A stretch of 64,000 bases of DNA from Diadema antillarum. Lineage: Eukaryota. The position numbers and the translations under genes are program-made. The notes beneath the pieces were generated by a model, which saw only the letters and a program-made list of their open reading frames with translations, was not told the origin of the DNA and made no database searches. Shown in pieces: positions 26,965 through 58,649 of this stretch (positions are counted from its first letter, which is position 1; each line of letters starts with the position of its first letter). The stretch spans positions 868,001 to 932,000 of the forward strand of contig NW_027270920.1 in the NCBI RefSeq assembly GCF_040938485.1. Reading direction: 5' to 3'.

Positions 26965-27185
26965 TACTGTAAAACGAGGAATGCTTGCATGCATTTTAAT
27001 TCCGCGAATTTTGCGAGCGACAACAGTCGCGAAATTAAAATGCGCGAAAGTTCTTGATCACATACATGTAGTATGCATTGAAAACAAATGATGCCAGCGG
27101 CAATTCGCGAAAATTCACAAAAATTGGAGCCGTTGGCTCCAATTCGTGAAATTTTCACGCCGCGAATATATCACGTTTTACAGCA
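26965..27185. mobile_element. TA-flanked MITE (TACTGTAAAACG...CGTTTTACAG) upstream of class B TLR
   Basis: Terminal inverted repeat and internal TTCGCGAA repeats. Paralogous copies at 41841-42057 and 59561-59777; family members near 2690-2895, 16487-16680 and 48030-48280. Confidence 0.7.
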
Positions 27186-28121
27186 TGCAATCTACTTAGC
27201 CAAGCAAAATACTTCGTAAAAGTTGTGCTTATTCTTGGTAACGAAGAAACTGGCCCAGACTCCAAACCATGATGGTGTAACATGAGGAGTAAGAGAACAG
27301 GAATCGTGCGACTGCCCTGTTTTTCTTTCATTCTTTGTTTTGTGCCACACAGTGAATCCTTAATGCTTAATTTCTTCTCTCACAGTTTTCTTTGGCAGTC
27401 AAACCAGAAAGGAGAGAAATGGGTACGGAAGTCTTGTGTTATTCTCATTTCTTTTCTTTCTTGCTTGCATTGTAGTTACCCGGTATATATGCTTGTCATG
27501 ACATCAGCGAAAAAGTCAGAATTTCATGATTTGAGTAACATTTGCATAAATCATAAGTTTAGTGCTGAAAGTGGGAAAAGGAAAGAAAGTAAGAGATTAA
27601 CCGGGAAGTTGTCATGGCCATTGTTAAGGCTGCATGGAGGAGAAAAAACAAACAAACAAATGCATGTGGATGCGCTTCTCATATTCCCATCTGGATTTCT
27701 TTTTTCTTAACTTCTTCCTCAGAAAGGAAAGGGAAGGATATCACAGAAAAAAAAAAGTAGTTTACTTCAAAGAAGCGATGCTGAGAGTAAGAATGGCTGT
27801 ATGTTTCTGGACAGTCTGCAGTTGAGTCTTGTTGCTTCAAATGAATGTCTAGACTTCGATCAGATAACTATCTCCTGCCTTCTGTGTCATCCAGAGTGCT
27901 TTTAATGGCTGTCATGTACTAATTTTGCTTTGGGACACTGCTGCAACAATCTGCATTATGGAATTAGTCACATGACACCTATGAGATACACGTGCCTTGC
28001 AACTCACAGTGAGTCTTGGAAATGCATACTCTCTGGAAACTTGTAACAACAGCACAGACAATTTATTGTCACCTGCTCTGGCTGTGAAAGACACCTACTG
28101 CAACTTTGACTTTTGTTTTCG

Positions 28122-30926
28122 ATGGCCGTAGCCATGGCAACCAAGCTGGATACTGCTACTTCAACCGTTACAGCAATTGTGTGCTTACTATTGTGTGTTC
28201 AGGCCACCACGCCAACACCCTCTGGCCATTTCCATGTACAAAGTCAGCAGCGATGTAGATTCAAAGAAACCAGTGTGGGTGTCAAGGTATCCTGTACACA
28301 TCTCCATCTGACGTCCATACCTTGGAATTTGCCAAACAACACCATCTCGCTTGACTTATCATTCAACAACATCACGCTGCAGCGGAATGATTCCTTTACT
28401 AGCTTGCCAATGCTGGAAATTCTCAATTTGCAATGGAATAATATAGCAATTATTAGAAAAGAAATCTTCTGGCCACTGGCAAGTTTAAGGACTCTTATCT
28501 TGGATGAGAATGCTATAGAGTATCTCGAGGCTGCAACATTTCTTTACAACCCTCTCTAACAAACGTACCATTGGCTTTAAACTGTCTCACAGAAATTCCC
28601 ACTAGTGCTTTATCAGCCCTGTCTTCATTACCAGTGGTAAATTTAGCAACCAATTCTGTGAGATCTCTAAGCTTTAATGGATTTGAAAAATGGAAACACA
28701 TCTCCGAACTTTCCTTGAAATGTAAACAATATAACTGAAATAAACCCAACTGATTTCCTTCCTCTGCAAAACACCACAGTAGGTATTCTTGATCTGAGGG
28801 CAAACCAAATAGAGAGCTTACCTTACCACGCATTCTTCTACTTGAAGAATGTCAATGCAATCAATCTTGGAGGGAATAACATCTTCTCTTTTGGCATCTG
28901 GCCTTTCCTGGGCATGAAAGAAATAAGTACCCTCTATGTTGAGGGTTCATTGATTCATGAGCTCCCCCCAATGAATACTTCTGCAAATCTCTCATTGCCA
29001 TACCCAAACATTCCTAACCTTTCCCTACGGTATAATTTCTTACAATCTATCCCAAGTGGTGCCTTGTGGGGCTTTGACAAACTGAAGAGGCTTAACCTCC
29101 ATGGAAATAAGATTTCTGATATTACAAATGACTCTTTCTGTTGCCTACTATCTCTAGCAGACCTTGATATGTCCCAAAATGCATTGTCCTTCATTCCACA
29201 TGGTGCATTCTCTTGTTTGTCTAACCTCCAGCAGCTTAATGTGACAGGAAATGTTCTGAAGGTGGTTTCTCCACAGTCGTTTGCTGGCATGAACTCAATA
29301 AGGACTTTATTGCTTGCCAAAAATTTCATTGAGGAAGTATTAGGAGCAGCATGGACCATCCCTACCCTTCAAACACTTGATCTTTCACATAATCTCCTGG
29401 ACACTCTCAAGAGCAGACGATTCACTGGTCTGTCAAACCTTCAAGTGCTAAATATCTCATTTAATCTTCTCACCATGTTCACTCTGCAGTCCGTTTATGG
29501 ACTATCAAACCTGCAGAAGCTGTATGCCACAAATGAGAAACATTCATATTTGAATGGCATGCTTAAGGCTTTGCCAAAGCTGCAATACTTGGATGTGTCA
29601 AACAACCCGATCTCCTGGATGTCCATTGATCAATTCACTCACAATGCTGTCCTTGAAGAGCTGCGAATGGAACGAGGACAGTTGCTGGGCAGAGACTTAT
29701 TTGACAACAGTCAAAACATGTCTATTTTCAGAGGCCTTGCTTCCCTGGGCAAGCTCCGTTTGAAAGGGAACTTTTTGCATCAATTAGATCTTCGAACATT
29801 CTCAAACCTTTCCAATCTTTACTACCTGGATATGAGTGAGTCACGTATCACTGTTCTTGTCCCTCGAATATTCAAAGATTTACACTCTCTAAAGTTCCTG
29901 TATCTGAATGACAACAAGCTACTAGCACTTAATGGAGATGTGTTTCAGGGACTTGGAAGCTTAACAGTACTTCTTATCCAGAATAATTCACTCAGCAAAA
30001 TTGAGAAACAGACTTTTGCACCTACTCCAGAGCTACGAGCACTGTATTTGCCTGGGAATCATATCAACACCATACTTCCTGGAACCTTCTTTCCGACCAC
30101 AGATCATTCTCTGTCTATTGACATCTCCAGGAATCCCATCTCCTGCACCTGTGAGCTACAGTGGTTCAGGAACTGGCTTCACACAGCCAACATCAGAATT
30201 GAACATCCTGATCGGACACTGTGCTCCAGCGCCTCACTGCAGGTGCTCAAAAACAAGCCTCTACTGTCCTTTGATCCAGGTGACTTCTGTGGTGTGGACA
30301 CCGCTCTCATCACTGGACTATCCCTGACAGGAGCGGCTGTCTTTCTTCTCACTGTCCTCGCTTACATCAATCGCTGGTGGCTGAACTACAAATTCTTTCT
30401 GCTGAAGCTAGCCTTGTTTGGCTACAAGGAGGTTGAGGAAGATGTGGCAGAGGAGGACTACCGCTACCAGCTCAACGTCATGTTCCACGACGATGATGAG
30501 GGGTTTGTGAATGACATCCTGAGACCAGCCTTGATGCAGAGGATGCCTCATCTGCAGCACATCATCTACGGGGACGATGACCTCAACGTAGGGATGTTCT
30601 ATGTCGACGCCCTCTATCATGCTATTGAGAGCAGCTACAAGTCAGTCCTTTTGATAAGCAATCAGTCTGTGGGTGATGTCTGGTTTATGACCAAGCTCCG
30701 TATGGCGCTGGAGCACTTGAATGAGACCAGACTGGACAAAATCATTCTTGTGTTTCTGGAGGACATTGAGGACGACAACCTGCCCTATCTTGTCAGGCTC
30801 TTTCTGAGTAGGAACAGACCCTACATGTTGTGGACTGAGGATGAAGATGGACAGGAACTGTTCTGGGCCACTTTAGAGAAGAACATGAGGTCTAATAGGG
30901 TTCTCAACAATATCATTCCTGTTTGA
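28122..30926 (+). pseudogene. Toll-like receptor copy 2 (class B), intronless, frameshifted as assembled
   Basis: Same length (2805 nt) as intact class B copies, but a -1 near 28555 (TAA at 28557-28559) and a +1 at 28721-28722 break the frame. The downstream 694-aa ORF 28842-30926 is nearly identical to copies 4 and 6. Confidence 0.85.
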
Positions 30927-30990
30927 GATTGAATGGTGTAAACAAACAGCACATGTTGGGCCAAAGTTTGTGGGTAACATGCTTGTAAGT

Positions 30991-31180
30991 TACAGTGGAC
31001 TCCAGTTATAATGAAGTCCTGGGGACCTGCATCTTTCTTTCGTTATTATCTAAATTTTGTTATAACCCAACAAATACACAATAAAAATACATAGAGAGCA
31101 TAATGTTGGAGCTGAATTTTTTCTTCGTTGTAACCAGAATTGTCATTATATTGTGTTCATTACAACGGGAGTGCCTCGTA
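30991..31180. mobile_element. Tc1/mariner (Tigger-like) MITE in the class B TLR 3' flank
   Basis: TACAGTGGACTCCAGTTATAATGAAGTCCTGGGGACC...CAACGGGAGTG, same family as 7072-7249. Copies at ~45862-46054 and ~63585-63777. Confidence 0.6.
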
Positions 31181-33184
31181 TCAATCCAGCCGAATAGCCT
31201 TCAGTTTTCCTTGATTTACGTCCTTGTTCAGACTTCAAATCCAAATCACCAATATTTGGTGATTATTTGTACCTACACGTGTATAGTGAGTGTGCTTATA
31301 AACTCAAAACAGCAGGTAAAGAGGAACAAAGAAACTATGTGCTTGATCCTATTTCACTATTTGAAAAAGAGACTGTAGACTTTGTCATAATATAATTGCA
31401 TGTTGTATTCTCTGCTTTCAGAATATTTGAGTCCAACATTTTTAGATAAAATAATTTCCTGGCACATAACAATGTCATCTTGCCAATTTGTTCTAATGTG
31501 TGAACACTATTCTTCAGAAGATATCTAAAATCTAGTTCGATTGCTGAAGAAAAAAATAATATGCATCTTCTTAACCATTTCCATATAGTTAGCTGGCTTC
31601 TATTACAAAAACTTGGCAACTGAAAGTCTTCCTAAAAGCAACTTGACTGCACACACTAGTCATACTTGCTTGATATCAAATGTCTGATTTATTATGATAG
31701 TGTGAGCATCTCAAATGCATTGAAGACATAATCTTGTGAATTATCAGAACAATTGATTGTATATATTGGCTGTAGAATCTTCATGAATTTGACCTAAATT
31801 GTTAGAACTTCTATGTGTCTAACTAAGGAACAGATTGTTCATTGCTACCGATGTATAAAAATACTTAATGCAATTCATGTTGATATTTATTCACAAAGAT
31901 GTAAAGTACAGGTCTGATATTCAATTCAATACTTTAGTCAGAAATTCACAAATTTGACATACTCTTTTTGACTTCAGTCAAAGACTGAGGCAAAATTGGT
32001 AAATTCTAATCACTGATTATGTAAATATTTGACTGAAAGAACTTCATTCAAGTGAAATACTAAGTTTAAATCTGAAGTTTTCATGTTTTTCATTTCGGTT
32101 ACATATTTGCTTTATATAAGCATGAAGGAAGGGCCCTTATGTTAATCATTAGAAGAAAAAAAAACACGAAACAAACCCTGACTAAATTATGCTGTGGGTT
32201 AAGTAAGGCTTCCTGTATCACCTTCACTACCATCATTGGCCAGTGTAACATTGGTGTGGGGCAGATGAACGTATTCATTTTTTAAAAGAGAACAGTAATC
32301 AAGAGTTGATCAGGAGATAAAGACACAAGAAGCATTACTGAGGTTCTTATGTCGCATCACGAGGTTAGGATGTGACAATTGTATGTGGGGTAGGAAAGGT
32401 AGCACAATATTTACTTTGACACTGCAAAACCTATAAGTGAGCATTACACAAAAATCTAATGCAAAGTGAGCAAGCAAGGCACCCTTTGGGTAAATGTGAC
32501 ATAAGGATTCTAAAGAATATTTTCCGAAACAGGAAGTAAAAGTCTGATAGTTGACGACAAAATATGATGTACATAACACAATCTACTTAGCCAAGCAAAA
32601 TATTTTGTAAAAGTTTGGCTTATTCTTAGAATAGTAATGAATGAACTGGCCCAGACTAGAAACCATGATGGTGTGATATGAGGAGTAAGAGAGCAGAAAT
32701 CATGTGCCATGTTCTTCCTCCATTCTTTGTTTTGAGCTGCAGAGTGATTCACACATACACTGTAATCTCCTCTCTCACAGTTTGCTTTGGCAGTCGAAAT
32801 AGAAAGGAGAGAAATGGGTACGGAAGTCTGGTGTTATTCTTATTTCCTGCTTTTTTGCTTACATTGCAGTCAGTTAGTATTAAAGTTCATGCACAAATCT
32901 GGCATGATATTAATGTTTTGGTGAAATTTGAATTAAAAAAAAACTACACATGAAATGTCATATGACTCTCCAGAGAAAGCTTCCTTACAGGGACACTGTC
33001 TTAGTGACTTTTAAAAGAATACATGGTTTTTAACCAACTGTGTATTTGTGCATTGCATTCCAATTTTCTTCAATCCAAAGTACCTGCTTCATACTTTATT
33101 TTTTTTTGTAATGACCTCAAAGAGTTTACTGTCTGTATTCATCTTATACTGCTCATGAGTCCCTAATTCCTCTGGAACCATTGA

Positions 33185-34005
33185 TGAAAACAAGTTCACA
33201 AAATGAAGGTCTAATATCTCCTGAATATTACTAGAACAGTAGTGAAGTTTGAGGAAAATCGTACAATCCATTCAAAAGATACATCCTGGTATCCTTAAAG
33301 TGTCTGTGCACTCACTGCTGTATGAGAAGACTACTCCTGTTTGTGATGTCACATGTATAGAAGGATGTATGTTCCTCACTCAGACAATTTACTTGGATAT
33401 CTCCCTCAAGGGCCATTGCGGACATGGTTCGTTTGGGGCATACATATGGAGAGGCAATTGCATGCGTATGCCCGTTTCCATACGTATGCCCCAAACGAGT
33501 TGTGTCCGCAGCGGCCTTCCATATACATTGCCTCTCCCTCGCTTCTTCTACCACCCCGACTTTGCCACTGTCACTATCAGTGTCATTGTCACTGTCATCA
33601 CTCAATTCACTCTTGACGTCAAACTCAAAGTCTTTCCGTGCAATATCAGGTAAAAATCAGATGTTTTAATGTCTCAGCCGAGAAAGCAGATGCGACTAAA
33701 GACGGGCCAGATATTGCATCCGCTCACCATGAAATAAGTGCTCTATGAATGGCAGCCTCGATGTCCCGCTGCACTCGTAAAGGGTTTTGTTCATTTCGTG
33801 ATGTCATATTTTAGGGCTCGAAAAAGACGGCTGTTCCGGAGCAAAAAACGGTGAAGTAAATCAGTCAGTTTTAACTCGCGATTTCTCAGTGGCTCAAATA
33901 TCTTTTGATAAGTCACATTAAAAATCTGTTTCAGGAGACATTTCCTCTGCTTTGACACCTTCTTTTATATGATTTTCTTGATTTTAATGTCTCATTCACC
34001 ATACT
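33185..34005. mobile_element. Composite Kolobok-like relic at the junction between repeat units 1 and 2
   Basis: The left part (33185-33360) resembles the left arm of the 18646 MITE. A 22-bp inverted repeat lies at 33429-33498. The right part ends in a TTAA-AG terminus at 34005/34006 and encodes on - an acidic DFEFDVKSELSDDSDNDTDSD...TTRLGHTY segment. Confidence 0.6.
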
Positions 34006-34136
34006 TTAAGTACGAGGACAGGGAAGAAGAAGAAAATAGGATTATGAAAAACACTTCTGCATATATAAGCAAATGGCAGAGCTTTCAACTTTCTTTGTTA
34101 AGCACGGGATAGCACATACACAAATCAATTACCAAA

Positions 34137-34396
34137 GGGGGGGGGGGGGGGCGCGCGCTGTGGCATAGTGGATAAGACTCTCTACTCCCAATCGGAGGAC
34201 CAAAGTTTGATTCCCGCCAGTGCTTATGCCCTTGGACAAAATGTTTTACCCACAATGTCCCTCTTGACCCAGGTGTATAAATGGGTACCTGGCAACGCTG
34301 GGGTAATAATAATGGCAGGGCCCTCTGGTAGAGCAGTGGCAGCACTGAAGAGGCTACCCTGGATAAATAAGACCTTGTTATTACTATTATCATTAT
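34137..34396 (+). mobile_element. tRNA-derived SINE (co-duplicated copy)
   Basis: Same element and same flanking position as 19257-19511. Confidence 0.7.
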
Positions 34397-35553
34397 AACT
34401 ACAGAGGGAATTACAATGACCTAGATGGATGTCAACCAAGTCAAAATTATAGTAGTCTGGTTGATATACAAATGATGCACAGGTCTGAATGCACCAAAAG
34501 GAATTGTGTGCATGCCCGTAGGGTGACTATGGAATCGTTAATCACCCACAAGACTAAGCCGAGTGGGTATAGACTAGATTCCATGGTTACCGCAGGCACA
34601 CTATCAACTCCCCCCTCAAAAAAAAAAAAAGAGAAGAAAGAAAAGAAAGTGGATATACTAATGTTTGTACTGTAGTATCAAGCACACATGTCTCTAAATC
34701 TTGCCAAGCACTGAATATTTCTGCTAGAGGTTTCACCTACATGTACATTTTTCTCATGACCCTGAACCTATTCAACTTAAAAGAGAAAAAAAAATAACCT
34801 CTTCTTTCTTTCATTCAAGATATTCAAATTCCTTGATGTTTCTGTCTGTGTTAGCTATCGTCCAAATTAGGATTCATATGACAGACTGTGAGGTGAACTG
34901 ATTGTTTGATTCCCTAACCACAAATGGTCACGAAAAGAAATATGCTGGGGTAATTTTGAAAGTGAAACATGGTGCTGAAAGTGGGAAAAGGAAAAAGAAA
35001 AAAAATATGATGCCAGGGAAGCTATCAAGGCCACTGTGGGGGGGGGGGGGGGGGGGGGGAGTGCTTCTCATTCCCACCTGGAAATATTTTCTTTTTTTTT
35101 AAGTTAAACTTGTTACTCAGGAAGGAAAGGGAAGAGTCTCACAAAATAAAGGCAGTCTGCTTCAAAGTAGGGACGCTGAGAGTAAGAATGGCTGTAATGT
35201 TACTGGACAGTCTGCAGTTAAGTCTCGTTGCCTCAAATAAATGTCTACAGACTTTGATTGGACAAACATCTTGTGCCTTTAGTATCATCCAGTGTGATTT
35301 TATAGAACATCACTGCTTTTAATAGCTGCCAAACATTAATTTTGTTTTGGGATCCTGCTGAAGTAGTCTGCTTCAATGGAAAAGTCACACGACAGCTGGA
35401 AGACACACGTCATGCCTTTCAGCTCACAGTGATTCTCAGAAAGGAATGCTTACTGGAAACTCGTAACAACAGCACAGACAATTTATTGTCACCAACTCTG
35501 ACAGGGAAAGACACCTACAGGAACTTCACCCTTTATTTTGGAAGCTTGTGGCC

Positions 35554-46881: not shown

Positions 46882-48880
46882 AGGGGAATACTAAAGAAAT
46901 AGAATTATATATGAAGTGAAAGAGTGGGATACATAGAACAATTTGTCGTTTACATCGTTTAAAATGGCCTTTTTGACGTGGAGTTAGAGGATTTTGAAAA
47001 TTTACACCTGTCACCCCCCTGAAATCTAGGTCACAGCGTAAATTTCGAGGCTTTGCCTATGACGTCATGGGATGAAAGGAATCGCGCAAGGTCTCGAGTG
47101 TCGCAGGCCCCCGCGCGCATAATGTATACATTGTATCATACAAGTTGTTGTAGATAGTATTTGCATACAAAGTTTAAAAGTTTGTTTTTCGATAATGCAC
47201 GACATCGTTCGTTAAGGCCATGCAGTGATGATCAGGATGATTTCTTGGTGGAATTTGAATGTGGGAGCGATGATGAACTGAGTGATACAGTACACACTAG
47301 TGATGATAACGATGATGAAACTAGTGATGATGACCCTGGTGAAGTTGGAGAGATAGATGTTGCTGACGAGCCGCACGGCGGGGCGCAGGAGGGAGACGCT
47401 ATGGGCGAGCTAGTGGGGAAGGCCCAGGGCGGTCCGGTTGAAGCGGATGGACTTTAATAGTGGAGATTGGCAGTTCGAGCCCTTGCCACACGGCAGGCCA
47501 GGGGACAATGTTGGTGACGCAGGACCAATGCTAGGTAGACTTCAAAATTTAGATGGGTAAGAGTTTTTTTTAATTCTGAACTGAAAATGAACCGAGCTTA
47601 GTGCTGACTTGATCTTGTACTTCAGAGCAGCAGTAGGCCTAACTGAACACAGCCCAGTCGCTGTAAGTAGCGCAGCGTCTGGTCGGGCTACGTATTATCA
47701 ATCACATCACACTCACTCCTAACTATACACAGCCCAGTCGCTGTACGTAGGTACGTCGCGACAGGTATTCGCACAGCGTACTTACAGCGTCTGGTCGGGC
47801 TAACTCACTCCGTACTCCCGTTCACAGCTCATCAGCATTCTATCTAGCAAGAGCTAGGTACTGCACGATCCATTCATTACTTCACCGAGTCCATCAAAGT
47901 TTTATCACTATCGATGAAAATCGCAGTGCTCTGTATCGTTTATTTTATCACCAGATAGGCCAGCCGGCCTAGTCAAGACTTCGACTTAGCCGATGCCCGC
48001 GCATTGATTGCGTGGTATCTAGCATTAGCGATCCACGTATGCCGAATGTTTCGCGAGTTTTTTTTTATTATTTTCGCCAATTTCGCGAACCTGGTGCTTT
48101 TTGCGAATTTAAAAACACGAGAAAATATTAACTCTCTTTCCGTATATATTTCCCCCTTCCGTGGTGTACTCCACAACCACGAATTTAAGCACTCGCGAAA
48201 TTATTGGCAAGTCCCAATTCGCGAAAAAATAGACTCGCTAAATACATGTGTATGGCGTACACAGCTGTAGTACTACCGAGGAACTGCCGATATAATACAT
48301 TGTACGTACCAAAGAGGTACGAAGCTCAGGCTTCTCGCCCGCTCTTTGATACACGAAGGCTACTGCACTGCGACATACGCGGCCGGTGATGGGCGCATGC
48401 ATGTGACTGATTGACTACGAAGCACCATCGTACAGGCACTAGGCCTGACAGCTTCTGTATTCGTGGCCTAAATAACACGTAACAGACTCTATTTAAACGA
48501 GGAAATGTGTGATTTCACAGGAGACTTGAAGTAGAAAACAATTTTATTTCATTTTTTGTGACATTCTGATAAAAAATGTCTTGGGATTTCGGGGTATGAG
48601 CCTCGACATCACGCTCTCATCGAGAGCATACATAGGTAAGCTTAGGCTGTTGTGTGATACTTCCGGGTTTGCCTTTCATCCCATGACGTCATGGACACGC
48701 CCCCAAAATAACCACGGATCTTCCGATTGAGCATGATTCAGGATACAATTTTTCTAAGCAGCCGTTCTCCAAAACGCAATTTTCTAAATGGATGAATTAA
48801 AGGCTGGTGTGTTTAACATGCTCTATGCTTGAAATGGGGGAATAATCCAACAAAATATGCATTTCCTTTAGTATTCTGCT
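46882..48880. mobile_element. Non-autonomous Kolobok-type DNA transposon, 1999 bp, TTAA-flanked
   Basis: TTAA AGGGGAATACTAAAG...CTTTAGTATTCTGCT TTAA. Perfect 20-bp subterminal inverted repeat TGACGTCATGGGATGAAAGG (47060-47079 / 48672-48691). Acidic ORF 47161-47457 followed by a WQFEP...RLQNLD segment. Absent from the paralogous spacer near 32073. Confidence 0.8.
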
Positions 48881-48884
48881 TTAA

Positions 48885-49650
48885 CCCTAAAAAGACTGGG
48901 CTATTTTGGTAGCTCGAAAGACTGGGGGGGGGGCCTAAAGGGCCCCCCCTTAAGATCTCGGCCGTGGATCGCGCGATTGCCGCGGAAATTTGCACAATGG
49001 TAGTGTGCGATGTAATCTACAAGATCGTATATTTAAATTTTCCAAAATGGTCTTCTTTTATTTTATTTTGATTAATTAAGCTAATTTATGCGAGAAATCA
49101 GACTTTTTGATCTAAATCAATAAATAAAGCTCCAAAAGTGCTCATTTTTGGTCTAAATATTCTTTGTGGCATTCTTAGCAAATGTACTTGAAAAAAGATT
49201 CGGTATCAAAATTGATTTCTTATTTATTTTATTGTTTTATGAATTTCTTATGTATTTCTTTGTTTTTTCGACCTTTTGTTTTTGTTGTTTTTTCCAGCAA
49301 AATTTGTGGCAGACCCTTTTTGAAGCATAATTCTACTAAAACAAATTAATTTTAGCCATTGAGAGTAAAAATAAACATATTTATATAAACAATGTGAAAA
49401 AACTCAATTTGTATTGACTTTGTACACAAAATCACATTTTTGAGCCATTTTTGGTCTCGCGAGCATGTACAAAAAGTTATGTAACTTCAGAACCGTACCC
49501 CCGGGCATCACAAATTTGGTGTCAAAATGTGCGGGAAACTCGAAAGAAAAAAGTCATAGAGCATCGCGGTGAGAGCATTGGGTGTTGCAGAGTAATCGCG
49601 CGAAATGTCGAGGGGGGGGGCCTTTTAGGCCCCCCCCAGTCTTTTTAGGG
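48885..49650. mobile_element. piggyBac-type MITE, 766 bp, TTAA-flanked
   Basis: Perfect 16-bp TIR CCCTAAAAAGACTGGG at both ends, with TTAA at 48881-48884 and 49651-49654. Absent from the paralogous spacer. Confidence 0.9.
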
Positions 49651-50764
49651 TTAAGTTTTCACATTTTTCATTTCGGTTACATAATTAGCTTTATACGCAC
49701 AAAGGAAGGGCCCTTACATTAATCATTAGAAGAAAGAAATGAAACAAACCCTGATTAAATTACACTGTGATTTCAATGAGGCTTCCTGTATGACCTTCAC
49801 TACCATCACTGGCCAGTGTAACATTGGTGTGGGGCAGATGAACGTATTCATTTTTTTCAAACAGAACAGTAATCAAGAGTTGATCAGGAGATAAAGAGAC
49901 AAGAAGCATTACTGAGGTTCTTATGTCGCATCAAGAGGTTAGGAAGTGACAATTGTATGTGGGGTAGGAAAGGTAGCACAATATCTACTTTGACACTGCA
50001 AAACCTATAGATGAGCATTATTACACAAAAATCTAAAGCAAAGTGAGCAAGCAAGTAAAGGCACCCTTTTGGCAAATGTGACATGGATTCTAAGGAATAT
50101 TTTCCTTAACATAAAGTATAAGTCTGATAGTTGACAATAGAATATGATGTACATACACAATCTACTTGGCCAAGCAAAATACTTCGTAAAAGTTTGGCTT
50201 ATTCTGAGAAAAGTAATGAATGAACTGGCCCAGACTAGAAACCATAATGGTGAGATATGAGGAGTAGGAGAGCAGGAATTATGTGTCCTGTTTTTCTTCC
50301 ATTCTTTGTTTTGAGCTACAGAGTGATTCACATACACTGTAATCTCCTCTCTCACAGTTTCCTTTGGCAGTCGAAATAGAAAGGAGAGAAATGGGTACGG
50401 AAGTCTTGTGTTATTCTTATTTCCTGCTTTTTTGCTTACATTGCAGTCATTTAGTATCAAAGTTCATGCACAAATCTGGCATGATATTAATGTTTTGGCG
50501 AAATTTGAATTAAAAAAAAAAAATCTACACATGAAATATCATATGACTCTCCAGAGAAAGCTTCCTTATAGGGACACTGTCTTAGTGACTTTTAAAAGAA
50601 TACATGGTTTTTAACCAACTGTGTATTTGTGCATTGCATTCCAATTTTCTTAAATCCAAAGTATCTGCTTCATACTTTATTTTTTGTAATGACCTCAAGG
50701 AGTTTACTGTCTGTATTCATCTTATATTGCTCATAATGAGTCCCTAATTCCTCTAGAACCATTG

Positions 50765-51586
50765 AAGAAAACAAGTTCACAAAATGAAGGTCTACTATCT
50801 CCTGAATATTACTAGAACAGTAGTGAAGTTTGAGGAAAATCGTACAATCCATTCAAAAGATACATCCTGGTATCCTTAAAGTGTCTATGCACTCACTGCT
50901 GTATGAGAAGACTACTCCTGTTTGTGATGTCACATGTATAGAAGGATGTATGTTCGTCACTCAGACAATTTACTTGGATATCTCCCTCAAGGGCCATTGC
51001 GGACATGGTTCGTTTGGGGCATACGTATGGAGAGGCAGTTGCATGCGTATGCCCGTTTCCATATGTATGCCCCAAACGAGTTGTGTCCGCAGCGGCCTTC
51101 CATATACGTTGCCTCTCCCTCGCTTCTTCTACCACCCCGACTTTGCCACTGTCACTATCAGTGTCATTGTCACTGTCATCACTCAATTCACTCTTGACGT
51201 CAAACTCAAAGTCTTTCCGTGCAATATCAGGTAAAAATCAGATGTTTTCATGTCTCAGCCGAGAAAGCAGATGCGACTAAAGACGGGCCAGATATTGCAT
51301 CCGCTCACCATGAAATAAGTGCTCTATGAATGGCAGCCTCGATGTCCCACTGCACTCGTAAAGGGTTTTGTTCATTTCGTGATGTCATATTTTAGGGCTC
51401 GAAAAAGACGGCTGTTCCGGAGCAAAAAACGGTGAAGTAAATCAGTCAGTTTTAACTCGCGATTTCTCAGTGGCTCAAATATCTTTTGATAAGTCACATT
51501 AAAAATCTGTTTCAGGAGACATTTCCTCTGCTTTGACACCTTCTTTTATATGATTTTCTTGATTTTAATGTCTCATTCACCATACT
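50765..51586. mobile_element. Composite Kolobok-like relic at the junction between repeat units 2 and 3
   Basis: Near-identical copy of 33185-34005, ending at TTAA 51587-51590. Confidence 0.6.
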
Positions 51587-51718
51587 TTAAGTACGAGGAC
51601 AGGGAAGAAGAAGAAAATAGGATTATGAAAAACACACTTCTGCATATATAAGCAAATGGCAGAGCTTTCAACTTTCTTTGTTAAGCACGGGATAGCACAT
51701 ACACAAATCAATTACCAA

Positions 51719-51976
51719 AGGGGGGGGGGGGCGCACGCTGTGGCATAGTGGATAAGACTCTCTACTCCCAATCGGAGGACCAAAGTTTGATTCCCGCCAG
51801 TGCTTATGCCCTTGGACAAAATGTTTTACCCACAATGTCCCTCTTGACCCAGGTGCATAAATGGGTACCTGGCAACGCTAGGGTAATAATAATGGCAGGG
51901 CCCTCTGGTAGAGCAGTGGCAGCACTGAAGAGGCTACCCTGGATAAATAAGACCTTGTTATTACTATTATCATTAT
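51719..51976 (+). mobile_element. tRNA-derived SINE (co-duplicated copy)
   Basis: Nearly identical to 34137-34396 at the paralogous position. Confidence 0.7.
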
Positions 51977-52617
51977 AACTACAGAGGGAATTACAATGAC
52001 CTAGATGGATGTCAACCAAGTCAAAATTATAGTAGTCTGGTTGATATACAAATGATGCACAGGTCTGAATGCATCAAAAGGAATTGTGTGCATGCCCGTA
52101 GGGTGACTATGGAATCGTTAATCACCCACAAGACTAAGCCGAGTGGGTATAGACTAGATTCCATGGTTACCGCAGGCACACTATCAACTCCCCCCTCAAA
52201 AAAAAAAAAGAGAGAAGAAAGAAAAGAAAGTGGATATACTAATGTTTGTACTGTAGTATCAAGCACACATGTCTCTAAATCTTGCCAAGCACTGAATATT
52301 TCTGCTAGAGGTTTCACCTACATGTACATTTTTCTCATGACCCTGAACCTATTCAACTTAAAAGAGAAAAAAAATAACCTCTTCTTTCTTTCATTCAAGA
52401 TATTCAAATTCCTTGATGTTTCTGTCTGTGTTAGCTATCGTCCAAATTAGGATTCATATGACAGACTGTGAGGTGAACTGATTGTTTGATTCCCTAACCA
52501 CAAATGGTCACGAAAAGAAATATGCTGGGGTAATTTTGAAAGTGAAACATGGTGCTGAAAGTGGGAAAAGGAAAAAGAAAAAAAATATGATGCCAGGGAA
52601 GCTATCAAGGCCACTGT

Positions 52618-52648
<31 letters not shown>

Positions 52649-53142
52649 GTGCTTCTCATTCCCACCTGGAAATATTTTCTTTTTTTTTTAAGTTAAACTT
52701 GTTACTCAGGAAGGAAAGGGAAGAGTCTCACAAAATAAAGGCAGTCTGCTTCAAAGTAGGGACGCTGAGAGTAAGAATGGCTGTAATGTTACTGGACAGT
52801 CTGCAGTTAAGTCTCGTTGCCTCAAATAAATGTCTATAGACTTTGATCGGACAAACATCTTGTGCCCTTAGTATCATCCAGTGTGATTTTACAGAACATC
52901 ACTGCTTTTAATAGCTGCCAAACATTAATTTTGTTTTGGGATCCTGCTGAAGTAGTCTGCTTCAATGGAAAAGTCACACGACAGCTGGAAGACACACGTC
53001 ATGCCTTTCAGCTCACAGTGATTCTCAGAAATTAATGCTTACTGGAAACTCGTAACAACACCACAGACAATTTATTGTCACCAACTCTGACAGTGAAAGA
53101 CACCTACAGGAACTTCACCCTTTGTTTTGGAAGCTTGTGGCC

Positions 53143-55932
53143 ATGGCAAACAAGCTGGATAATGCTGGTTCAACCGTTACAGCAATTGTGTGCTTACTGT
53201 TGTGTGTTCAGGCCACCACGCCTGCATCCTTTGACAATTTCCACACAAGTCAGCAGCAATGCAGATTCAAAGAAACCAGTGTGGGTGTCAAGGTATCCTG
53301 TACACATCTCCATCTGACGGACGTCCCTCGGAATTTGCCAAACAACACCATCACACTTGATTTATCACACAACAACATCACATTGCAGCAGAACGATTCT
53401 TTTAAAGGCCTGGCAATGCTAGAAACTCTCAATCTGGAATGTAATGATATAGCAACTGTTAGACAAGAAATCTTTTGGCCTCTGGGAAATTTAAGGACAC
53501 TTATCTTGCGTGAGAATGCTATTGAGTATCTAGAGCCAGCAACATTTCTCTACAATCCTCTTCTAACAAATGTGCCATTGCCTTTTAACTGTCTCACAGA
53601 AATTCCCACTGGTGCTTTATCAACCCTGTCTTCATTACCAGTGGTAAATTTAGCAAGTAATTCTGTGAGATCTCTAAGCTTTAATGGATTTGAAAAATGG
53701 AAACACATACCCAAAAATTCCTTGAATGTAAACAAAATAACTGAAATAAATCCAACTGATTTTCTTCCTCTGCAAAACAGCACAGTAGGAATTCTTGATT
53801 TGAGGGCAAACCAAATAGAGAGCTTACCTAACCAAGCATTCTTCTACTTGAAGAATGTCAACGCAATCAATCTTGGAGGGAATAGCATCTTCTCTTTCGG
53901 CGTCTGGCCTTTCTTGGGCATGAAAGAAATAAGTACCCTCTATGTTGACGGCTCATTGATTCATGAGCTCCCCCCAATGAATACTTCTGCAAATCTCTCA
54001 TTGCAATACCCAAACATTCCTAACCTTTCCCTACGGTATAATTTCTTACAATCTATCCCAAGTGGTGCTTTGTGGGGCTTTGACAAACTGAAGAAGCTTA
54101 ATCTCTTTGCAAACAAGATTTCTGATATCAAAAATGACTCTTTCTGTTGCCTGCAATCCCTAACAGACCTTGATCTTTCCCAAAACAAATTGTCCTTCAT
54201 TCCACATGGAGCATTCTCTTGCTTGTCTAACCTTCAGCAACTTAATGTGACAGGAAATGTACTGAAGGTGGTTTCTCCTCAGTCTTTTGATGGCATGCAA
54301 TCAATAAGGACTATACTGCTTGCAAAAAATTTCATTGATGAAGTTCTAGAAGCAGCATGGACCATCCCCACCCTCCAAACACTTGATCTCTCATACAACC
54401 TCCTGGACACTGTCAAGAAAAGAAGATTGGTTGGTCTGTCAAACCTTCAAACATTGAACATCTCATTTAATCTTCTCACCATATTCACTCTGCAGTCCGT
54501 TTATGGACTATCAAACCTGCAGAAGCTGTATGCCACAAACGAAAAAAGTTCATATTTGAATGGCATGTTTAAGGCTTTGCCGAAGCTGCAATTCTTGGAT
54601 GTGTCAAACAGTAAGATCTCCTGGAAGTCCATTGATCAATTCAGCAACAACGCTGACCTTGAGGAGCTGCGAATGGAACAGGGACAGCTATATGGTACAG
54701 GTTTGTTTGATAACAGTCAAAACATCTCTCTTTTTATAGGTCTGGATTCCCTGGGTAAGCTCCGTTTGAAGGGGAATTTTTTCCATCAATTAGATCTTCG
54801 TACATTCTCAAACCTTTCCAAACTTTACTACCTGGATATGAGTGAGTCACGTATCACTGTTCTGGTCCCTCAAATATTTAAAGATTTGCAATCTCTCAAG
54901 TTCCTGTATCTGAATGACAACATGCTACTAGCACTGAATGGGAATGTGTTTAAGGGACTTGGAAGCTTAACAGTACTTCTAATCCAGAACAATTCACTCA
55001 GCAAAATTGAAAAGCAGACCTTTGCACCTACTCCAGAGCTACGAGCACTGTATTTGCCTGGGAATCATATCAACACCATACTTCCTGGAACCTTCTTTCC
55101 GACCACAGATCATTCTCTGTCTATTGACATCTCCAGGAATCCCATCTCCTGCACCTGTGAGCTACAGTGGTTCAGGAATTGGCTTCACACAGCCAACATC
55201 AGAATTGAACATCCTGATCGGACACTGTGCTCTAGTGCCTCATTGCAGGCACTCAAAAACAAGCCTCTACTGTCCTTTGATCCAGGTGACTACTGTGGTG
55301 TGGACATCGGTCTCATCAGTGGATTATCCCTGACAGGAGCAGCTGTATTTCTTCTCACTGTCCTCGCTTACATCAATCGCTGGTGGCTGAACTACAAATT
55401 CTTTCTGCTGAAGCTAGCCTTGTTTGGCTACAAGGAGGTTGAGGAAGATGTGGCTGAGGAGGACTACCGCTACCAGCTCAACGTCATGTTCCACGACGAT
55501 GATGAGGGGTTTGTGAATGACATCCTCAGACCAGAATTGATGCAGAGGATGCCCCATCTGCAGCACATCATCTATGGGGACGATGACCTCAACGTAGGGA
55601 TGTTCTATGTCGACGCCCTCTATCATGCTATTGAGAGCAGTTACAAGTCGGTCCTGTTGATAAGCAATCAGTCTGTGGGTGATGCCTGGTTTATGACCAA
55701 GCTCCGTATGACACTGGAGCACTTGAATGAGACCAGACTGGACAAAATCATACTTGTGTTTCTGGAGGACATTGAGGACGACAACCTGCCCTATCTTGTC
55801 AGGCTCTTTCTGAGTAGGAACCGACCCTACATGTTGTGGACTGAGGATGAAGATGGGCAGGAACTGTTCTGGGCCACTTTAGAGAAGAACATGAGGTCTA
55901 ATAGGGTTCTCAACAATATCATTCCTGTTTGA
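53143..55932 (+). CDS. Toll-like receptor copy 5 (class A N-terminus, chimeric), intact, 929 aa
   Basis: Uninterrupted ORF from GCCATGG at 53143. N-terminus as copy 3, divergent central LRRs, class B-type LRRCT, then TM and TIR. Confidence 0.96.
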   Translation: MANKLDNAGSTVTAIVCLLLCVQATTPASFDNFHTSQQQCRFKETSVGVKVSCTHLHLTDVPRNLPNNTITLDLSHNNITLQQNDSFKGLAMLETLNLECNDIATVRQEIFWPLGNLRTLILRENAIEYLEPATFLYNPLLTNVPLPFNCLTEIPTGALSTLSSLPVVNLASNSVRSLSFNGFEKWKHIPKNSLNVNKITEINPTDFLPLQNSTVGILDLRANQIESLPNQAFFYLKNVNAINLGGNSIFSFGVWPFLGMKEISTLYVDGSLIHELPPMNTSANLSLQYPNIPNLSLRYNFLQSIPSGALWGFDKLKKLNLFANKISDIKNDSFCCLQSLTDLDLSQNKLSFIPHGAFSCLSNLQQLNVTGNVLKVVSPQSFDGMQSIRTILLAKNFIDEVLEAAWTIPTLQTLDLSYNLLDTVKKRRLVGLSNLQTLNISFNLLTIFTLQSVYGLSNLQKLYATNEKSSYLNGMFKALPKLQFLDVSNSKISWKSIDQFSNNADLEELRMEQGQLYGTGLFDNSQNISLFIGLDSLGKLRLKGNFFHQLDLRTFSNLSKLYYLDMSESRITVLVPQIFKDLQSLKFLYLNDNMLLALNGNVFKGLGSLTVLLIQNNSLSKIEKQTFAPTPELRALYLPGNHINTILPGTFFPTTDHSLSIDISRNPISCTCELQWFRNWLHTANIRIEHPDRTLCSSASLQALKNKPLLSFDPGDYCGVDIGLISGLSLTGAAVFLLTVLAYINRWWLNYKFFLLKLALFGYKEVEEDVAEEDYRYQLNVMFHDDDEGFVNDILRPELMQRMPHLQHIIYGDDDLNVGMFYVDALYHAIESSYKSVLLISNQSVGDAWFMTKLRMTLEHLNETRLDKIILVFLEDIEDDNLPYLVRLFLSRNRPYMLWTEDEDGQELFWATLEKNMRSNRVLNNIIPV

Positions 55933-56648
55933 GATTGAATGATGCAGAAAACAGTATATAATGGCCCAAAGCTGAAGTGTTTCTGGAATTACACCCTTTT
56001 TTTCAGCCCTCAAATCCAGCTTGCCAATATTTGGTACGTTTGTTCCTTAAAGCTATGGCTATACATGTAAACTCTGAACAGCATGTCAAAAGAATGAAGG
56101 TACACACACATGCTACTTTCTTACTGTTTCAAAACACACCATCAAATTGGTCATAAAGCAACCTATAAAAATTTACTCTCCGCTCTGAGATCATTTGAGA
56201 ATGATAAGAACATGTCCTTGTACATTACAATGACAAATTTGTTCTGATGTGTGTCTACTCTGATACTCTTCAACAGAAATTTAAAATCTATTTGAGTAGA
56301 AATCAATAATTGTTAAGAACATGTGGCTGTTATAGCAGAATTAACTATTTAAAGGCACTGTACATTACATACGTGTGACATCTGACAAATTTGTTCTGTA
56401 CATGTCTACTCTGTAAGATTTTACTCTTCAGTAGAAATTGCTCCTTTAATAAATTCTAGTTCTGTATGCTGAAAATTTCTTTTCTACTTAGAAATCAATG
56501 CATTGGTTCTATACTGTTAGAAAAAGAACTGTTTTCATATGACTGTTATAGCTACACAGTTTGTTTCAATGGCACTACAGAAACTTCACAATTGAAAGTC
56601 GACGCTCTATGTTCCTACATAGAATGTCAAGACATTGTCAAGATAGAC

Positions 56649-58649
56649 AAACCATGGGTGTCGAGAACACCGAGAGACCTACTATACAAAAAGAGTTGTC
56701 AACTCAACAAAGGTAATTTAGATGAGGTAGCACATGATCAAAGACAAATCAAAGAGAAAGTTCAGTTATGTAGAGATGTTTTAAAGGGATGATTGAGAAA
56801 AGAATTTGCAGATGATTTGAAGGCTGGCTGGCAAAATGTGCAAATTTGGCAGACTACAAATAAATATAGTTTCTGAACATGATGTCAGGTTGATCTGCCA
56901 AAAGGTTAAAGCTCAAAAGGCTCCCAGTAACAAGAGGGTAAGTTCTCAAGTTCTGCAGAGATCAGGTGACAAATGTGTTTACACATTTACTGCAGAAGTG
57001 TCTTGACACCGGGCTACTTCCCAAATCATACAAAGGGTGCATTTGTTATTCCTGTACTAAAGGCGAAATATATGAATTACATGATTCTAGACCAATGATT
57101 TTAGACCAATTGCACTTATGCAAGTTCTGTAATGAAGTGTTTTGAGAAGATTTTGCTGAATTTCTGGTTGTAAGAAACAGAGACCCATTTTAAATAGACA
57201 CACAAATGAATGCAGTTTGCTTTACAGGGGTAGGGGGTCTGTGGAAGAAGCCATTTTTTGTACTTAATAGAAATGCCTTCTTGCATGAAGACTTACCTGG
57301 GACATAGATAAGATCAACTTTTGAAATTTTTCTAATGTCTTTAATACAACAGTTATACATTTGTTAACTCAGTAAACATGGGTGTCAATCTTTGCATCAC
57401 ATTGTTAATTCATAACGTCATGCAGCAACCAAACCACAGAGAGTCAAGGTTGGTCAAACAACCTCTAATGCTTGAACTGTTAGAATTGGTGTGTCACAGA
57501 AAAGTGTTTTGTCATCTGTTTTATTTCATTCACATATCAGTGAATTTACTGCCAAAAGAGACAAGTGTCTGACCATAAAATATGCTGATGATTAATACAG
57601 TAGTCTCAGGGTATCTGAATTCAAGCAATGTGGACAGAACTTTACGTCTAAAAATAGATTGATTTGGTCAAAGGTGTGTCCTTGTTGAACAGGCCTTCAA
57701 GTATAAGTAGGCCTACCTGAGCACAAAACTTGCCAATAATTTAGACAGGACTTCCAATGCACTGCTGATTCAGAATAATGCCAATCCAAGACAACTTTCC
57801 ATAAGGCAATTGAGTAAATCGAGGCTTGACAAAACACTGGCAGTTCTGTACAACAAGTTCATAATTTAATCTATCTATACCGTATACAATTTAATATGGT
57901 TTTATGTTAATCTTACACAAAAAGACAGGGTGAGAATTAATGGGCCACAAAAGTGTGGTGCCTGCAAAAAATTTTGGCAAAAAAATGAAAGAAAACAAAA
58001 GATAAAAAAAACATGAAATACATAAGACATTCACAAAACAAAGAACAAAAGAAATTGAATTTGATTGTGCCATTTTTTTGTACGACAATTGTTTGACGTG
58101 TCTTGAGGGATTGTGACACAAAAATTTAGCAATCCTTCAGTCTTTCTAACGGAGTTACAGGCGAAAACATGATTTCCAGCATAAATTTGCATAATTAATT
58201 TACTAAACATAGAAAATCAATATTTTTCTATTGTATGAAGTTGACATCTGGCTTTATGTTCGGGCAAAATTTTGCAGCAATCGCGCCATCGGCGGCCGAG
58301 ATCTGAAGTGGGGTCTCAAATAGCCCACTAGCAGTTAGAACAGGGTCAATCGGCCACAAAAGTGTGCGCAAAAGATAGTTGGTTTGGAATTGCCTATGGT
58401 CTAGGCTTAATATGTTGAGAGAATGATGGTCAAAATAAATGAAATAATGACTGATTCCACACACCCTCTGTGCCATTATTATTAGTTTGAACATGTCAGG
58501 ATTCTGTCTCTGTCTTCCTTGCATGCTCATTTTAGACTAGATCTTTTGTCCCGGATTCAATCCATACATATAATGACAGAGTAATTAGGTATGGTTTATG
58601 TGCATTTTTCATTGCATTTATATTGTATTTCCATTATGTCTTCCGGCAG
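56649..58649 (+). mobile_element. Decayed LINE RT relic (co-duplicated copy)
   Basis: Paralog of 24052-26070. ORF 56466-56792 ends in the KPWVSRTPRDLLYKK...DQRQIKEKVQLC linker-like segment. Confidence 0.7.

What the first reader, a model, noticed from the sequence alone, without database searches (positions are those of the whole stretch)
33185..34110. The duplication breakpoint is a transposon end joined to a TTAA five bases from the PPWD1 splice acceptor
Seen: sequence from TTAA 34006-34009 onward (and 51587 onward) is a copy of the PPWD1 intron starting at TTAA 18550-18553 (TTAAG..GAGGACAGGGAAGAA.AAGAAAA...GCAAATGGCAGAGCTTTCAACTTTC). Left of that TTAA the original has the PPWD1 acceptor and exon. 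The copies instead have a TTAA-AG transposon terminus with Kolobok-like features. Established: Kolobok elements insert at TTAA and begin with purines, and DNA transposon ends can generate tandem duplications by aberrant one-ended or reversed-end transposition (shown for maize Ac/Ds). Inference: the first 14.8-kb duplication was transposase-mediated and stopped just short of the exon, leaving PPWD1 splicing intact. The third unit then arose by unequal crossover, since both junctions are near-identical.
Basis: partly seen in the sequence, partly recalled or inferred. Interest (0 to 1): 0.75.

Follow-up and report, generated by a model that had tools for sequence, protein, structure and literature searches.

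The report
Transposon end at a duplication junction
The boundary between repeated 15-kb blocks of immune-receptor (TLR) genes inside a PPWD1 intron really is the exact end of a cut-and-paste transposon joined to its TTAA target, but the evidence suggests the transposon remodelled an older duplication rather than making it.

Summary
33409-34005 and 50990-51586 are the last 597 bp of a high-copy, roughly 850-bp nonautonomous TIR element, here called TE-A. In 28 of 28 other genomic copies TE-A ends at the same base and is followed by TTAA. The DNA after the TTAA is a copy of the PPWD1 intron from TTAA 18550, five bases from a verified PPWD1 exon. TTAA duplications and AG...CT ends fit Kolobok, not piggyBac, but no transposase was found.

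- The relic has no left end.
- It starts at the foot of a strong hairpin.
- It is joined to the unit tail through microhomologies and a 146-bp inverted patch copied from a MITE 0.9 kb beyond the array.
- The last unit ends in unique ancestral sequence without TE-A, and no partner end lies within -20 to +60 kb.
- The relic, patch and tails date the junction to about half the age of the divergence between unit heads.
- The array is bracketed by two co-oriented MITEs of one family (chance about 1 in 600).

Best reading, about 0.5: an older repeat-mediated duplication that included the exon, then TE-A insertion and a repair-associated deletion, then unequal exchange. The single-step transposase model keeps about 0.2.

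The parts
18049..18359 (.). MITE-C, left copy. A long-TIR MITE in the next PPWD1 intron, just outside the proximal edge of the array.
   Evidence: co-oriented homology to the copy at 66295-66591 in extended coordinates (TIRs 85.5% over 62 bp and 81.5% over 65 bp); at least 3,373 candidate copies; random window pairs share a repeat in 1 of 628.
18461..18544 (-). PPWD1 exon, the start of the cyclophilin domain. The acceptor AG is at 18546-18545.
   Evidence: aligns to human PPWD1 residues 487-509 (2a2n, 5yzg chain 2); the downstream exons at 17228-17380, 15675-15923 and 14315-14470 are best matched by PPWD1.
18550..18553 (.). Native TTAA at the start of unit 1, five bases (ATCAG) from the exon. 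No transposon is present here.
18550..34005 (+). Unit 1: head, TLR a1 (broken ORF), TLR b1 (broken ORF), tail, junction.
18646..19201 (.). MITE-B insertion private to the unit 1 head. It has TTAA duplications at 18642-18645 and 19198-19201 and begins AGGACAAGTCCACC.
   Evidence: It is absent at the equivalent sites 34102 and 51685.
33224..33369 (-). 146-bp inverted patch of MITE-B sequence, templated from the copy 0.9 kb beyond the array end. It replaces 358 bp of unique tail sequence. The second copy is at 50805-50950.
   Evidence: the best genome-wide match, 88-89%, is extended coordinates 67145-67291 on the opposite strand; all other family members are at most 81%. AATAT microhomology at the left joint; the replaced 358 bp is single copy.
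33370..33408 (+). Segment C: the last 39 bp of the ancestral unit tail, equal to 66213-66250 in extended coordinates. The second copy is at 50951-50989.
   Evidence: In unit 3 it runs on into unique distal flank (ACAGTC...).
33409..34005 (+). TE-A relic: the right-hand 597 bp of a Kolobok-like nonautonomous element, ending at its true terminus. AGG microhomology marks its left joint.
33411..33516 (.). Internal inverted repeat (hairpin) of TE-A. The relic begins at its foot.
   Evidence: -36.5 kcal/mol as single-stranded DNA, z = -7.2; other family variants also break around it.
34006..34009 (.). TTAA joining the TE-A terminus to the head of unit 2.
   Evidence: X1 record 8, a 127-nt contig, bridges it with no differences.
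34006..51586 (+). Unit 2: head, TLR a2 (35548-38343), TLR b2 (42984-45797), a 2.8-kb private insert (46870-49652), tail, junction.
50990..51586 (+). Second copy of the TE-A relic. It has the same four breakpoints and is 99.6% identical to the first over the last 476 bp.
51587..51590 (.). TTAA joining the TE-A terminus to the head of unit 3.
51587..64000 (+). Unit 3: TLR a3 (53122-55932) and TLR b3 (60707-63520). It runs about 2,250 bp past the window and ends without TE-A.

Best explanation
The junction is a remodelled one. Shown: a nonautonomous TTAA-targeting element with AG...CT ends (TE-A, Kolobok-like) was joined by a transposase-type reaction to the TTAA at the head of a downstream unit copy. 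Its left 262 bp are missing up to the foot of its internal hairpin. That broken side is stitched to the unit tail by microhomology joints of 5, 1 and 3 bp, through a 146-bp inverted patch copied from a MITE 0.9 kb beyond the array and a 39-bp tail segment. Both present junctions are copies of this single joint. Inferred: the 15-kb block had already been duplicated, probably by unequal recombination between the two co-oriented MITE-C copies that still bracket the array. That would have copied the 84-bp PPWD1 exon into the intron. TE-A then inserted, or tried to insert, five bases from the copied exon's acceptor. A double-strand break at or near its left end was resected up to the hairpin and repaired by end joining or template switching. 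This deleted about 0.8 kb: 45 bp of flank, the hybrid MITE-C, the exon copy and the left part of TE-A. Insertion and deletion may have been one aberrant event or two separate events. Unequal exchange and gene conversion later produced three units.
For: The terminus-TTAA joint is seen in 28 of 28 other copies and full copies have TIRs and TTAA on both sides. The local inverted template for the patch is shown. The replaced 358 bp and the distal flank are single copy, so the unit 3 tail is ancestral. The hairpin sits exactly at the truncation point. No other TE-A copy or TIR lies from -20 kb to +124 kb. Dating: heads of U1 and U2 differ by 13.6% (non-CpG 12.8%, n = 1076). The TE-A relic differs from its family consensus by 4.6-5.0% (non-CpG 2.6-2.8%), that is 5-10% as a pairwise figure. 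Patch against template is 9.0%, and the tails of U2 and U3 differ by 6.6%. The MITE-C bracket is, and its empirical chance is 1 of 628 window pairs. J1 and J2 are 98-99.8% identical over 3.2 kb and share 22 of 22 private TE-A changes. Contigs from other samples carry the joints.
Against: Nothing remains of the postulated first junction: no hybrid MITE-C and no exon copy, either in the array or elsewhere in the assembly. The older duplication therefore rests on dating and on the bracket. The two MITE-C copies belong to different subfamilies and today share only about 62-65-bp TIRs at 81-86%. The clock assumes equal neutral rates and no exchange with a divergent haplotype, yet identity along the units is strongly mosaic. 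On all sites the dating difference is only about 2 sigma. An exon copy would have had to persist in the intron for some time. The bracket was noticed after the fact.
Confidence: 0.5

Rival explanations
1. One aberrant transposition made the founding duplication. The right end of TE-A integrated at TTAA 18550 on a sister chromatid or unreplicated site. The unit was re-replicated or joined across chromatids. The broken side was closed by end joining, as in the maize Ac/fAc tandem duplications with composite insertions.
For: The joint between the TE terminus and the native TTAA is exact. The other side is a microhomology joint, as in maize composite insertions, which show 3-9 bp of microhomology (PMC4270019). 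There are no exon remnants left of the relic. The last unit lacks TE-A, as sister-chromatid models predict. This model needs one event rather than three.
Against: There is no partner terminus or donor element at the distal edge or within -20 to +60 kb. The distal boundary...CAAGG|ACAGTC, has no TTAA or footprint. The TE-A relic, patch and tails are about half as diverged as the unit heads; at non-CpG sites 27 changes are expected and 11 observed. The MITE-C bracket would be a coincidence of about 0.2-1%. Haplotig pairs of TE-A loci differ by only about 0-1.3%, which is too little to explain the extra head divergence through an exchange between homologues.
Confidence: 0.2
2. TE-A once sat as a full element at TTAA 18550 beside the real exon. 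A broken fork or DNA end at the unit tail switched templates into it by microhomology and re-copied the unit (FoSTeS/MMBIR-like). The full copy beside the exon was later excised precisely.
For: The junction is a serial template-switch type with an inverted local patch and microhomologies of 1-5 bp. The relic is continuous with the TTAA and the head, as if copied from a resident insertion.
Against: It needs an insertion five bases from an essential acceptor to persist and then leave without a footprint. Precise excision is established for piggyBac (PMC7351741, abstract as listed), not for Kolobok. It has the same clock problem as the single-step model. The bracket remains unexplained.
Confidence: 0.07
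3. Non-allelic recombination between two TE-A copies that flanked the unit made the duplication.
For: A TE-A sequence sits at each internal junction.
Against: No TE-A lies at either outer edge: 18550 has the bare TTAA and the unit 3 tail runs into unique sequence. The junction copy is a one-ended relic joined by microhomology, not a hybrid full element.
Confidence: 0.02

Closest known systems
Kolobok superfamily nonautonomous elements, such as the Xenopus T2-MITEs (PMC6004289; PMC9587614)
   Same: TTAA target-site duplications, termini 5'-RR...YY-3' (here AG...CT), short TIRs, high copy number, and deletion derivatives of 750-1,550 bp.
   Different: No transposase could be linked to TE-A, so superfamily membership rests on end features only. 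The TIR sequence is unlike the published Xenopus TIRs.
Maize Ac/fAc alternative transposition: tandem direct duplications and composite insertions (PMC3744419; PMC4270019)
   Same: A transposon terminus joined to a target site at a tandem-duplication junction, with the other side closed by microhomology end joining.
   Different: Here there is a single one-ended relic. No paired termini or donor lie at the distal edge, there is no second target-site copy, and the junction looks younger than the duplication.
Repeat-mediated tandem duplication (NAHR and Alu-Alu-type rearrangements; own knowledge)
   Same: Co-oriented members of one repeat family lie just outside both edges of the array.
   Different: The diagnostic hybrid repeat at the internal junction is absent. 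It has to be assumed deleted.
Complex repair junctions with templated insertions (FoSTeS/MMBIR, abortive gap repair after transposon excision; named in the discussion of PMC4270019, otherwise own knowledge)
   Same: Several breakpoints lie within 800 bp, with microhomologies of 1-5 bp, an inverted patch copied from about 1 kb away, and a truncation at a hairpin.
   Different: One of the four joints is not a repair joint. It is a canonical terminus-TTAA integration joint.

Membership tests
Kolobok superfamily (TE-A) | TTAA target-site duplication | tested here: met
   28 of 28 right ends are followed by TTAA. Most full copies have TTAA on both sides.
Kolobok superfamily (TE-A) | Termini 5'-RR...YY-3' (AG in the Xenopus elements) | tested here: met
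   The TIR is AGTATGGTGAACGAG ... CTCGTTCACCATACT. The criterion comes from PMC9587614 and PMC6004289.
Kolobok superfamily (TE-A) | Kolobok-type DDE transposase in an autonomous relative | tested here: inconclusive
   150 scored copies have open frames of at most 180 aa. A 4-kb variant holds no coding sequence.
piggyBac superfamily (TE-A) | TIRs beginning CCC or CAC (CCCTT, CCCTC, CCCAT, CACTA) | tested here: not met
   TE-A begins AGTATGG. The criterion comes from PMC10813416.
piggyBac superfamily (TE-A) | Link to a PF13843 transposase | tested here: inconclusive
   The genome holds many PF13843 ORFs. The fetched 613-aa locus and the 620-aa family share no DNA or peptide similarity with TE-A. 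Other families were not fetched.
Alternative-transposition tandem duplication (Ac/Ds type) | Transposon terminus joined to a target site at the duplication junction | tested here: met
Alternative-transposition tandem duplication (Ac/Ds type) | Second terminus or donor element at the distal edge of the duplication | tested here: not met
   The unit 3 tail runs into single-copy flank without TE-A, TTAA or footprint. No TE-A or TIR lies from -20 kb to +124 kb.
Alternative-transposition tandem duplication (Ac/Ds type) | Junction and duplication of the same age | tested here: not met
   Non-CpG divergence of the heads is 12.8%, against 5.2-5.7% pairwise-equivalent for TE-A. The clock assumptions apply.
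Repeat-mediated (NAHR-type) tandem duplication | Co-oriented homologous repeats flanking the array | tested here: met
   MITE-C lies at 18049-18359 and at 66295-66591 in extended coordinates. The chance is 1 of 628.
Repeat-mediated (NAHR-type) tandem duplication | Hybrid repeat at the internal junction | tested here: not met
   There is no MITE-C sequence at 33000-34100 or 50700-51600. Deletion has to be assumed, so the array is not filed as a proven member.
Microhomology and template-switch repair junction | Microhomology at breakpoints and templated insertions from nearby sequence | tested here: met
   Microhomologies AATAT, A and AGG. The patch is best matched by the MITE-B copy 0.9 kb beyond the array, in inverted orientation.

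The most novel reading that the evidence does not exclude
A Kolobok-type transposase created a 15-kb tandem duplication of a TLR gene pair in one step. It integrated one end at a TTAA five bases from a PPWD1 exon, and the other side was closed by hairpin-limited resection and template-switch repair. This would be an animal counterpart of the maize Ac/fAc duplications, made by a single one-ended element.
Probability: 0.2. Interest if true: 0.65.

Novelty: new member of a known kind. Interest (0 to 1): 0.32.

Why it matters
This is a clean, base-resolved example of how several MITE families shape an expanding immune-gene (TLR) cluster nested in a housekeeping gene. It also shows that a transposon end at a duplication boundary does not prove the transposon made the duplication. 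Dating the relic against its family, reading the last unit's outer edge and checking the outer flanks changed the reading here. If the exon-copy intermediate existed, the insertion and deletion would illustrate how a harmful by-product of a duplication can be removed.

Tried and rejected
- A second allele was sought in the assembly. The exon and head occur only at the three array sites, although many TE-A loci are present twice as haplotigs.
- An autonomous TE-A was sought. The protein search with the exon-1-like peptide gave open frames of at most 180 aa, and four longer candidates held no transposase.
- A piggyBac link was tested with PF13843 loci. There was no DNA or peptide similarity.
- Recombination between flanking TE-A copies was rejected, because both outer edges lack TE-A.
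- Recombination between the two MITE-B copies was considered and rejected. It would place a hybrid MITE-B at the junction and remove the first 96 bp of the head, which is not what is seen.
- A crude motif scan for upstream PPWD1 WD-repeat exons in the 58 kb right of the array found nothing usable. That the array lies in an intron therefore rests on gene orientation and the acceptor.
- The PPWD1 exons were searched one by one.
- The Sola3 literature check gave no usable end criteria.

Full report
**Observation.**
A self-comparison shows that 18549-18645 matches 34005-34101 at 88.8% and 51586-51684 at 88.0%. Collinear blocks follow. The three units are:
- U1, 18550-34005;
- U2, 34006-51586, which carries a private 2.8-kb insert;
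- U3, from 51587, which extends about 2,250 bp beyond the window.

Each unit holds two intronless LRR+TIR (TLR-like) genes on the + strand. They are intact, at 931-937 aa, in U2 and U3, and broken in U1. Earlier notes s1-208862, s1-208861 and s1-208682 pointed to this.

Left of TTAA 18550-18553 come ATCAG and then a minus-strand exon at 18461-18544. The exon aligns to human PPWD1 residues 487-509. The downstream exons are best matched by PPWD1 residues 508-550 and 599-646.

**The transposon end.**
The stretch 33530-34005 belongs to a family with at least 316 candidate copies. All 28 other fetched copies, about 17 independent loci, end at the same base (...CACCATACT). TTAA follows, and then unrelated flanks. 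Full copies are about 750-1,550 bp, most commonly about 850 bp. They carry the 15-bp TIR AGTATGGTGAACGAG, and most have TTAA on both sides.

The window copies correspond to positions 263-849 of a full 849-bp copy and lack the left TIR. TTAA duplications with AG...CT ends meet the published Kolobok end criteria (PMC9587614, PMC6004289). They do not fit the CCC or CAC starts of piggyBac TIRs (PMC10813416). No transposase could be tied to the family. The label 'Kolobok-like' therefore rests on end features alone.

**Anatomy of the junction.**
The end of U3, fetched from beyond the window, is the key. Its tail runs ...CTCCCTCAAGG and then straight into single-copy flank (ACAGTC...). There is no TE-A there. 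In U1 and U2 the same tail is rearranged at four points.
1. At 33219/33224 the tail switches, at an AATAT microhomology, into a 146-bp piece of MITE-B in inverted orientation.
   - Its best match in the whole genome, at 88-89%, is the MITE-B copy at 67145-67291 in extended coordinates, 0.9 kb beyond the array. All other scored family members are at most 81%.
   - The patch replaces 358 bp of unique tail sequence.
2. At 33369/33370 the sequence returns to the last 39 bp of the tail (segment C).
3. At 33408/33409, at an AGG microhomology, it enters TE-A at position 263. That is the foot of a 106-nt hairpin (-36.5 kcal/mol, z = -7.2).
4. At 34005/34006 the TE-A terminus meets the TTAA of the next head.

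So the right joint is a canonical integration joint. The left side is a repair or template-switch joint.

The second junction has the same four breakpoints. The two relics share all 22 of the first relic's differences from the family consensus. The junction regions are 98-99.8% identical over about 3.2 kb. The mosaic identity along the units shows that such exchange has been frequent.

**The junction is real.**
Contigs from public runs bridge the joints.
- X2 record 19, a 369-nt contig from a different sample and study, bridges joints 1-3.
- X12 record 11, a 201-nt contig from a differently labelled organism, bridges joints 2-3.
- X1 record 8, a 127-nt contig with no differences, bridges joint 4.
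- The U3-type tail also appears in X1 and X3.

**Did the transposon make the duplication?**
Four results count against it.

- **No partner or donor.** There is no other TE-A sequence or TIR from 20 kb left to 60 kb right of the window. The distal boundary has no TTAA or footprint. The Ac/fAc models need paired termini at the distal edge (PMC4270019).
- **A one-ended, truncated relic.** It is cut at a hairpin and joined through templated patches. That is the mark of break repair.
- **Dating.**
  - A majority consensus of the right 476 bp was built inside a script from 17 independent copies. This is a nonautonomous DNA transposon, not a virus, and no sequence was printed.
  - The relic differs from that consensus by 4.6-5.0% (non-CpG 2.6-2.8%). 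Doubled, to compare with two diverging copies, that is 9-10% (non-CpG 5.2-5.7%).
  - The patch differs from its template by 9.0%. The tails of U2 and U3 differ by 6.6%.
  - The heads of U1 and U2 differ by 13.6% (non-CpG 12.8%, n = 1076).
  - At non-CpG sites about 27 changes are expected in the relic if it were as old as the head split. Eleven are seen.
  - The head split therefore looks about twice as old as the junction. Caveats: this assumes a local clock, all-site figures differ by only about 2 sigma, and an exchange with a divergent haplotype could inflate head divergence. Haplotig pairs here differ by only about 0-1.3%.
- **The MITE-C bracket.**
  - The array is bracketed by co-oriented copies of one long-TIR MITE family. 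One lies at 18049-18359, just beyond the exon. The other lies at 66295-66591 in extended coordinates, 45 bp beyond segment C.
  - Among 628 control pairs of 500-bp windows 10-20 kb apart in the flanks, one shared a repeat at E < 1e-8.

**Best reading.**
An older unequal recombination between the two MITE-C copies duplicated the block together with the 84-bp exon. TE-A later integrated at the TTAA five bases from the copied exon's acceptor. A break at its left side was resected to the hairpin and repaired with template switches. That deleted about 0.8 kb, including the hybrid MITE and the exon copy. Unequal exchange then added a unit.

The terminus-TTAA joint, the repair joints, the ancestral U3 tail and the single origin of both junctions are shown. 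The first duplication's mechanism, the exon copy and the deletion are inferred, and no remnant of them survives. I put this reading at about 0.5. The single-step transposase model is at about 0.2, template switching into a since-excised resident TE-A at about 0.07, and recombination between TE-A copies at about 0.02. The remainder is unassigned.

**Comparison and novelty.**
The element looks like a Kolobok MITE. The junction resembles the repair side of maize composite insertions and FoSTeS/MMBIR-type joints. The bracket resembles repeat-mediated duplications, but the hybrid repeat that defines those is absent, so membership is not claimed. Each ingredient is a known kind, and the case is a well-resolved new instance.

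Noticed in passing
window 18646-19201: A MITE-B copy, beginning AGGACAAGTCCACC and flanked by TTAA, sits in the head of unit 1 only. It therefore inserted after the heads diverged. Its ends resemble the Xenopus Kolobok T2-type TIRs (AGGAC...). The family has at least 1,338 candidate copies.
   Followed up: partly
window 22165-23535 and 28842-30926: The two TLR genes of unit 1 have shortened open frames of 456 and 694 aa, against 931-937 aa in units 2 and 3. The exon-proximal unit looks like a decaying copy.
   Followed up: partly
window 28591-30590, 43463-45461 and 61186-63184: The b-type TLR genes are 99-100% identical in all three units, while neighbouring DNA is 90-97% identical. This is a mosaic typical of gene conversion.
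   Followed up: partly
window 46870-49652: A 2.8-kb stretch is present only in unit 2, as an insertion there or a deletion in the others. Its nature was not examined.
   Followed up: no
window 33990-34045 and 51571-51626, minus strand: On the PPWD1 strand, the copied polypyrimidine tract of the head is followed by TTAA and then the AG that begins TE-A. Each junction therefore offers a possible decoy 3' splice site. No RNA data were laid.
   Followed up: no
window 16719-16947: Two adjacent 112-bp copies are 99% identical, inside a PPWD1 intron.
   Followed up: no
G000, many contigs (for example L047-L057): A piggyBac family has at least 30 copies with an intact 620-aa open frame, 99-100% identical over more than 4 kb in the fetched copies. 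This suggests a recently active TTAA transposase unrelated to TE-A.
   Followed up: partly
loci L003-L030 versus window 18340-18645: Many TE-A loci occur two to four times with identical flanks, as haplotigs or recent duplications. The PPWD1 exon and array head occur only once, so the second haplotype of this locus is missing or collapsed.
   Followed up: partly
window 34150-34400: A tRNA-derived SINE in the unit head has extremely high depth in all four runs laid.
   Followed up: no
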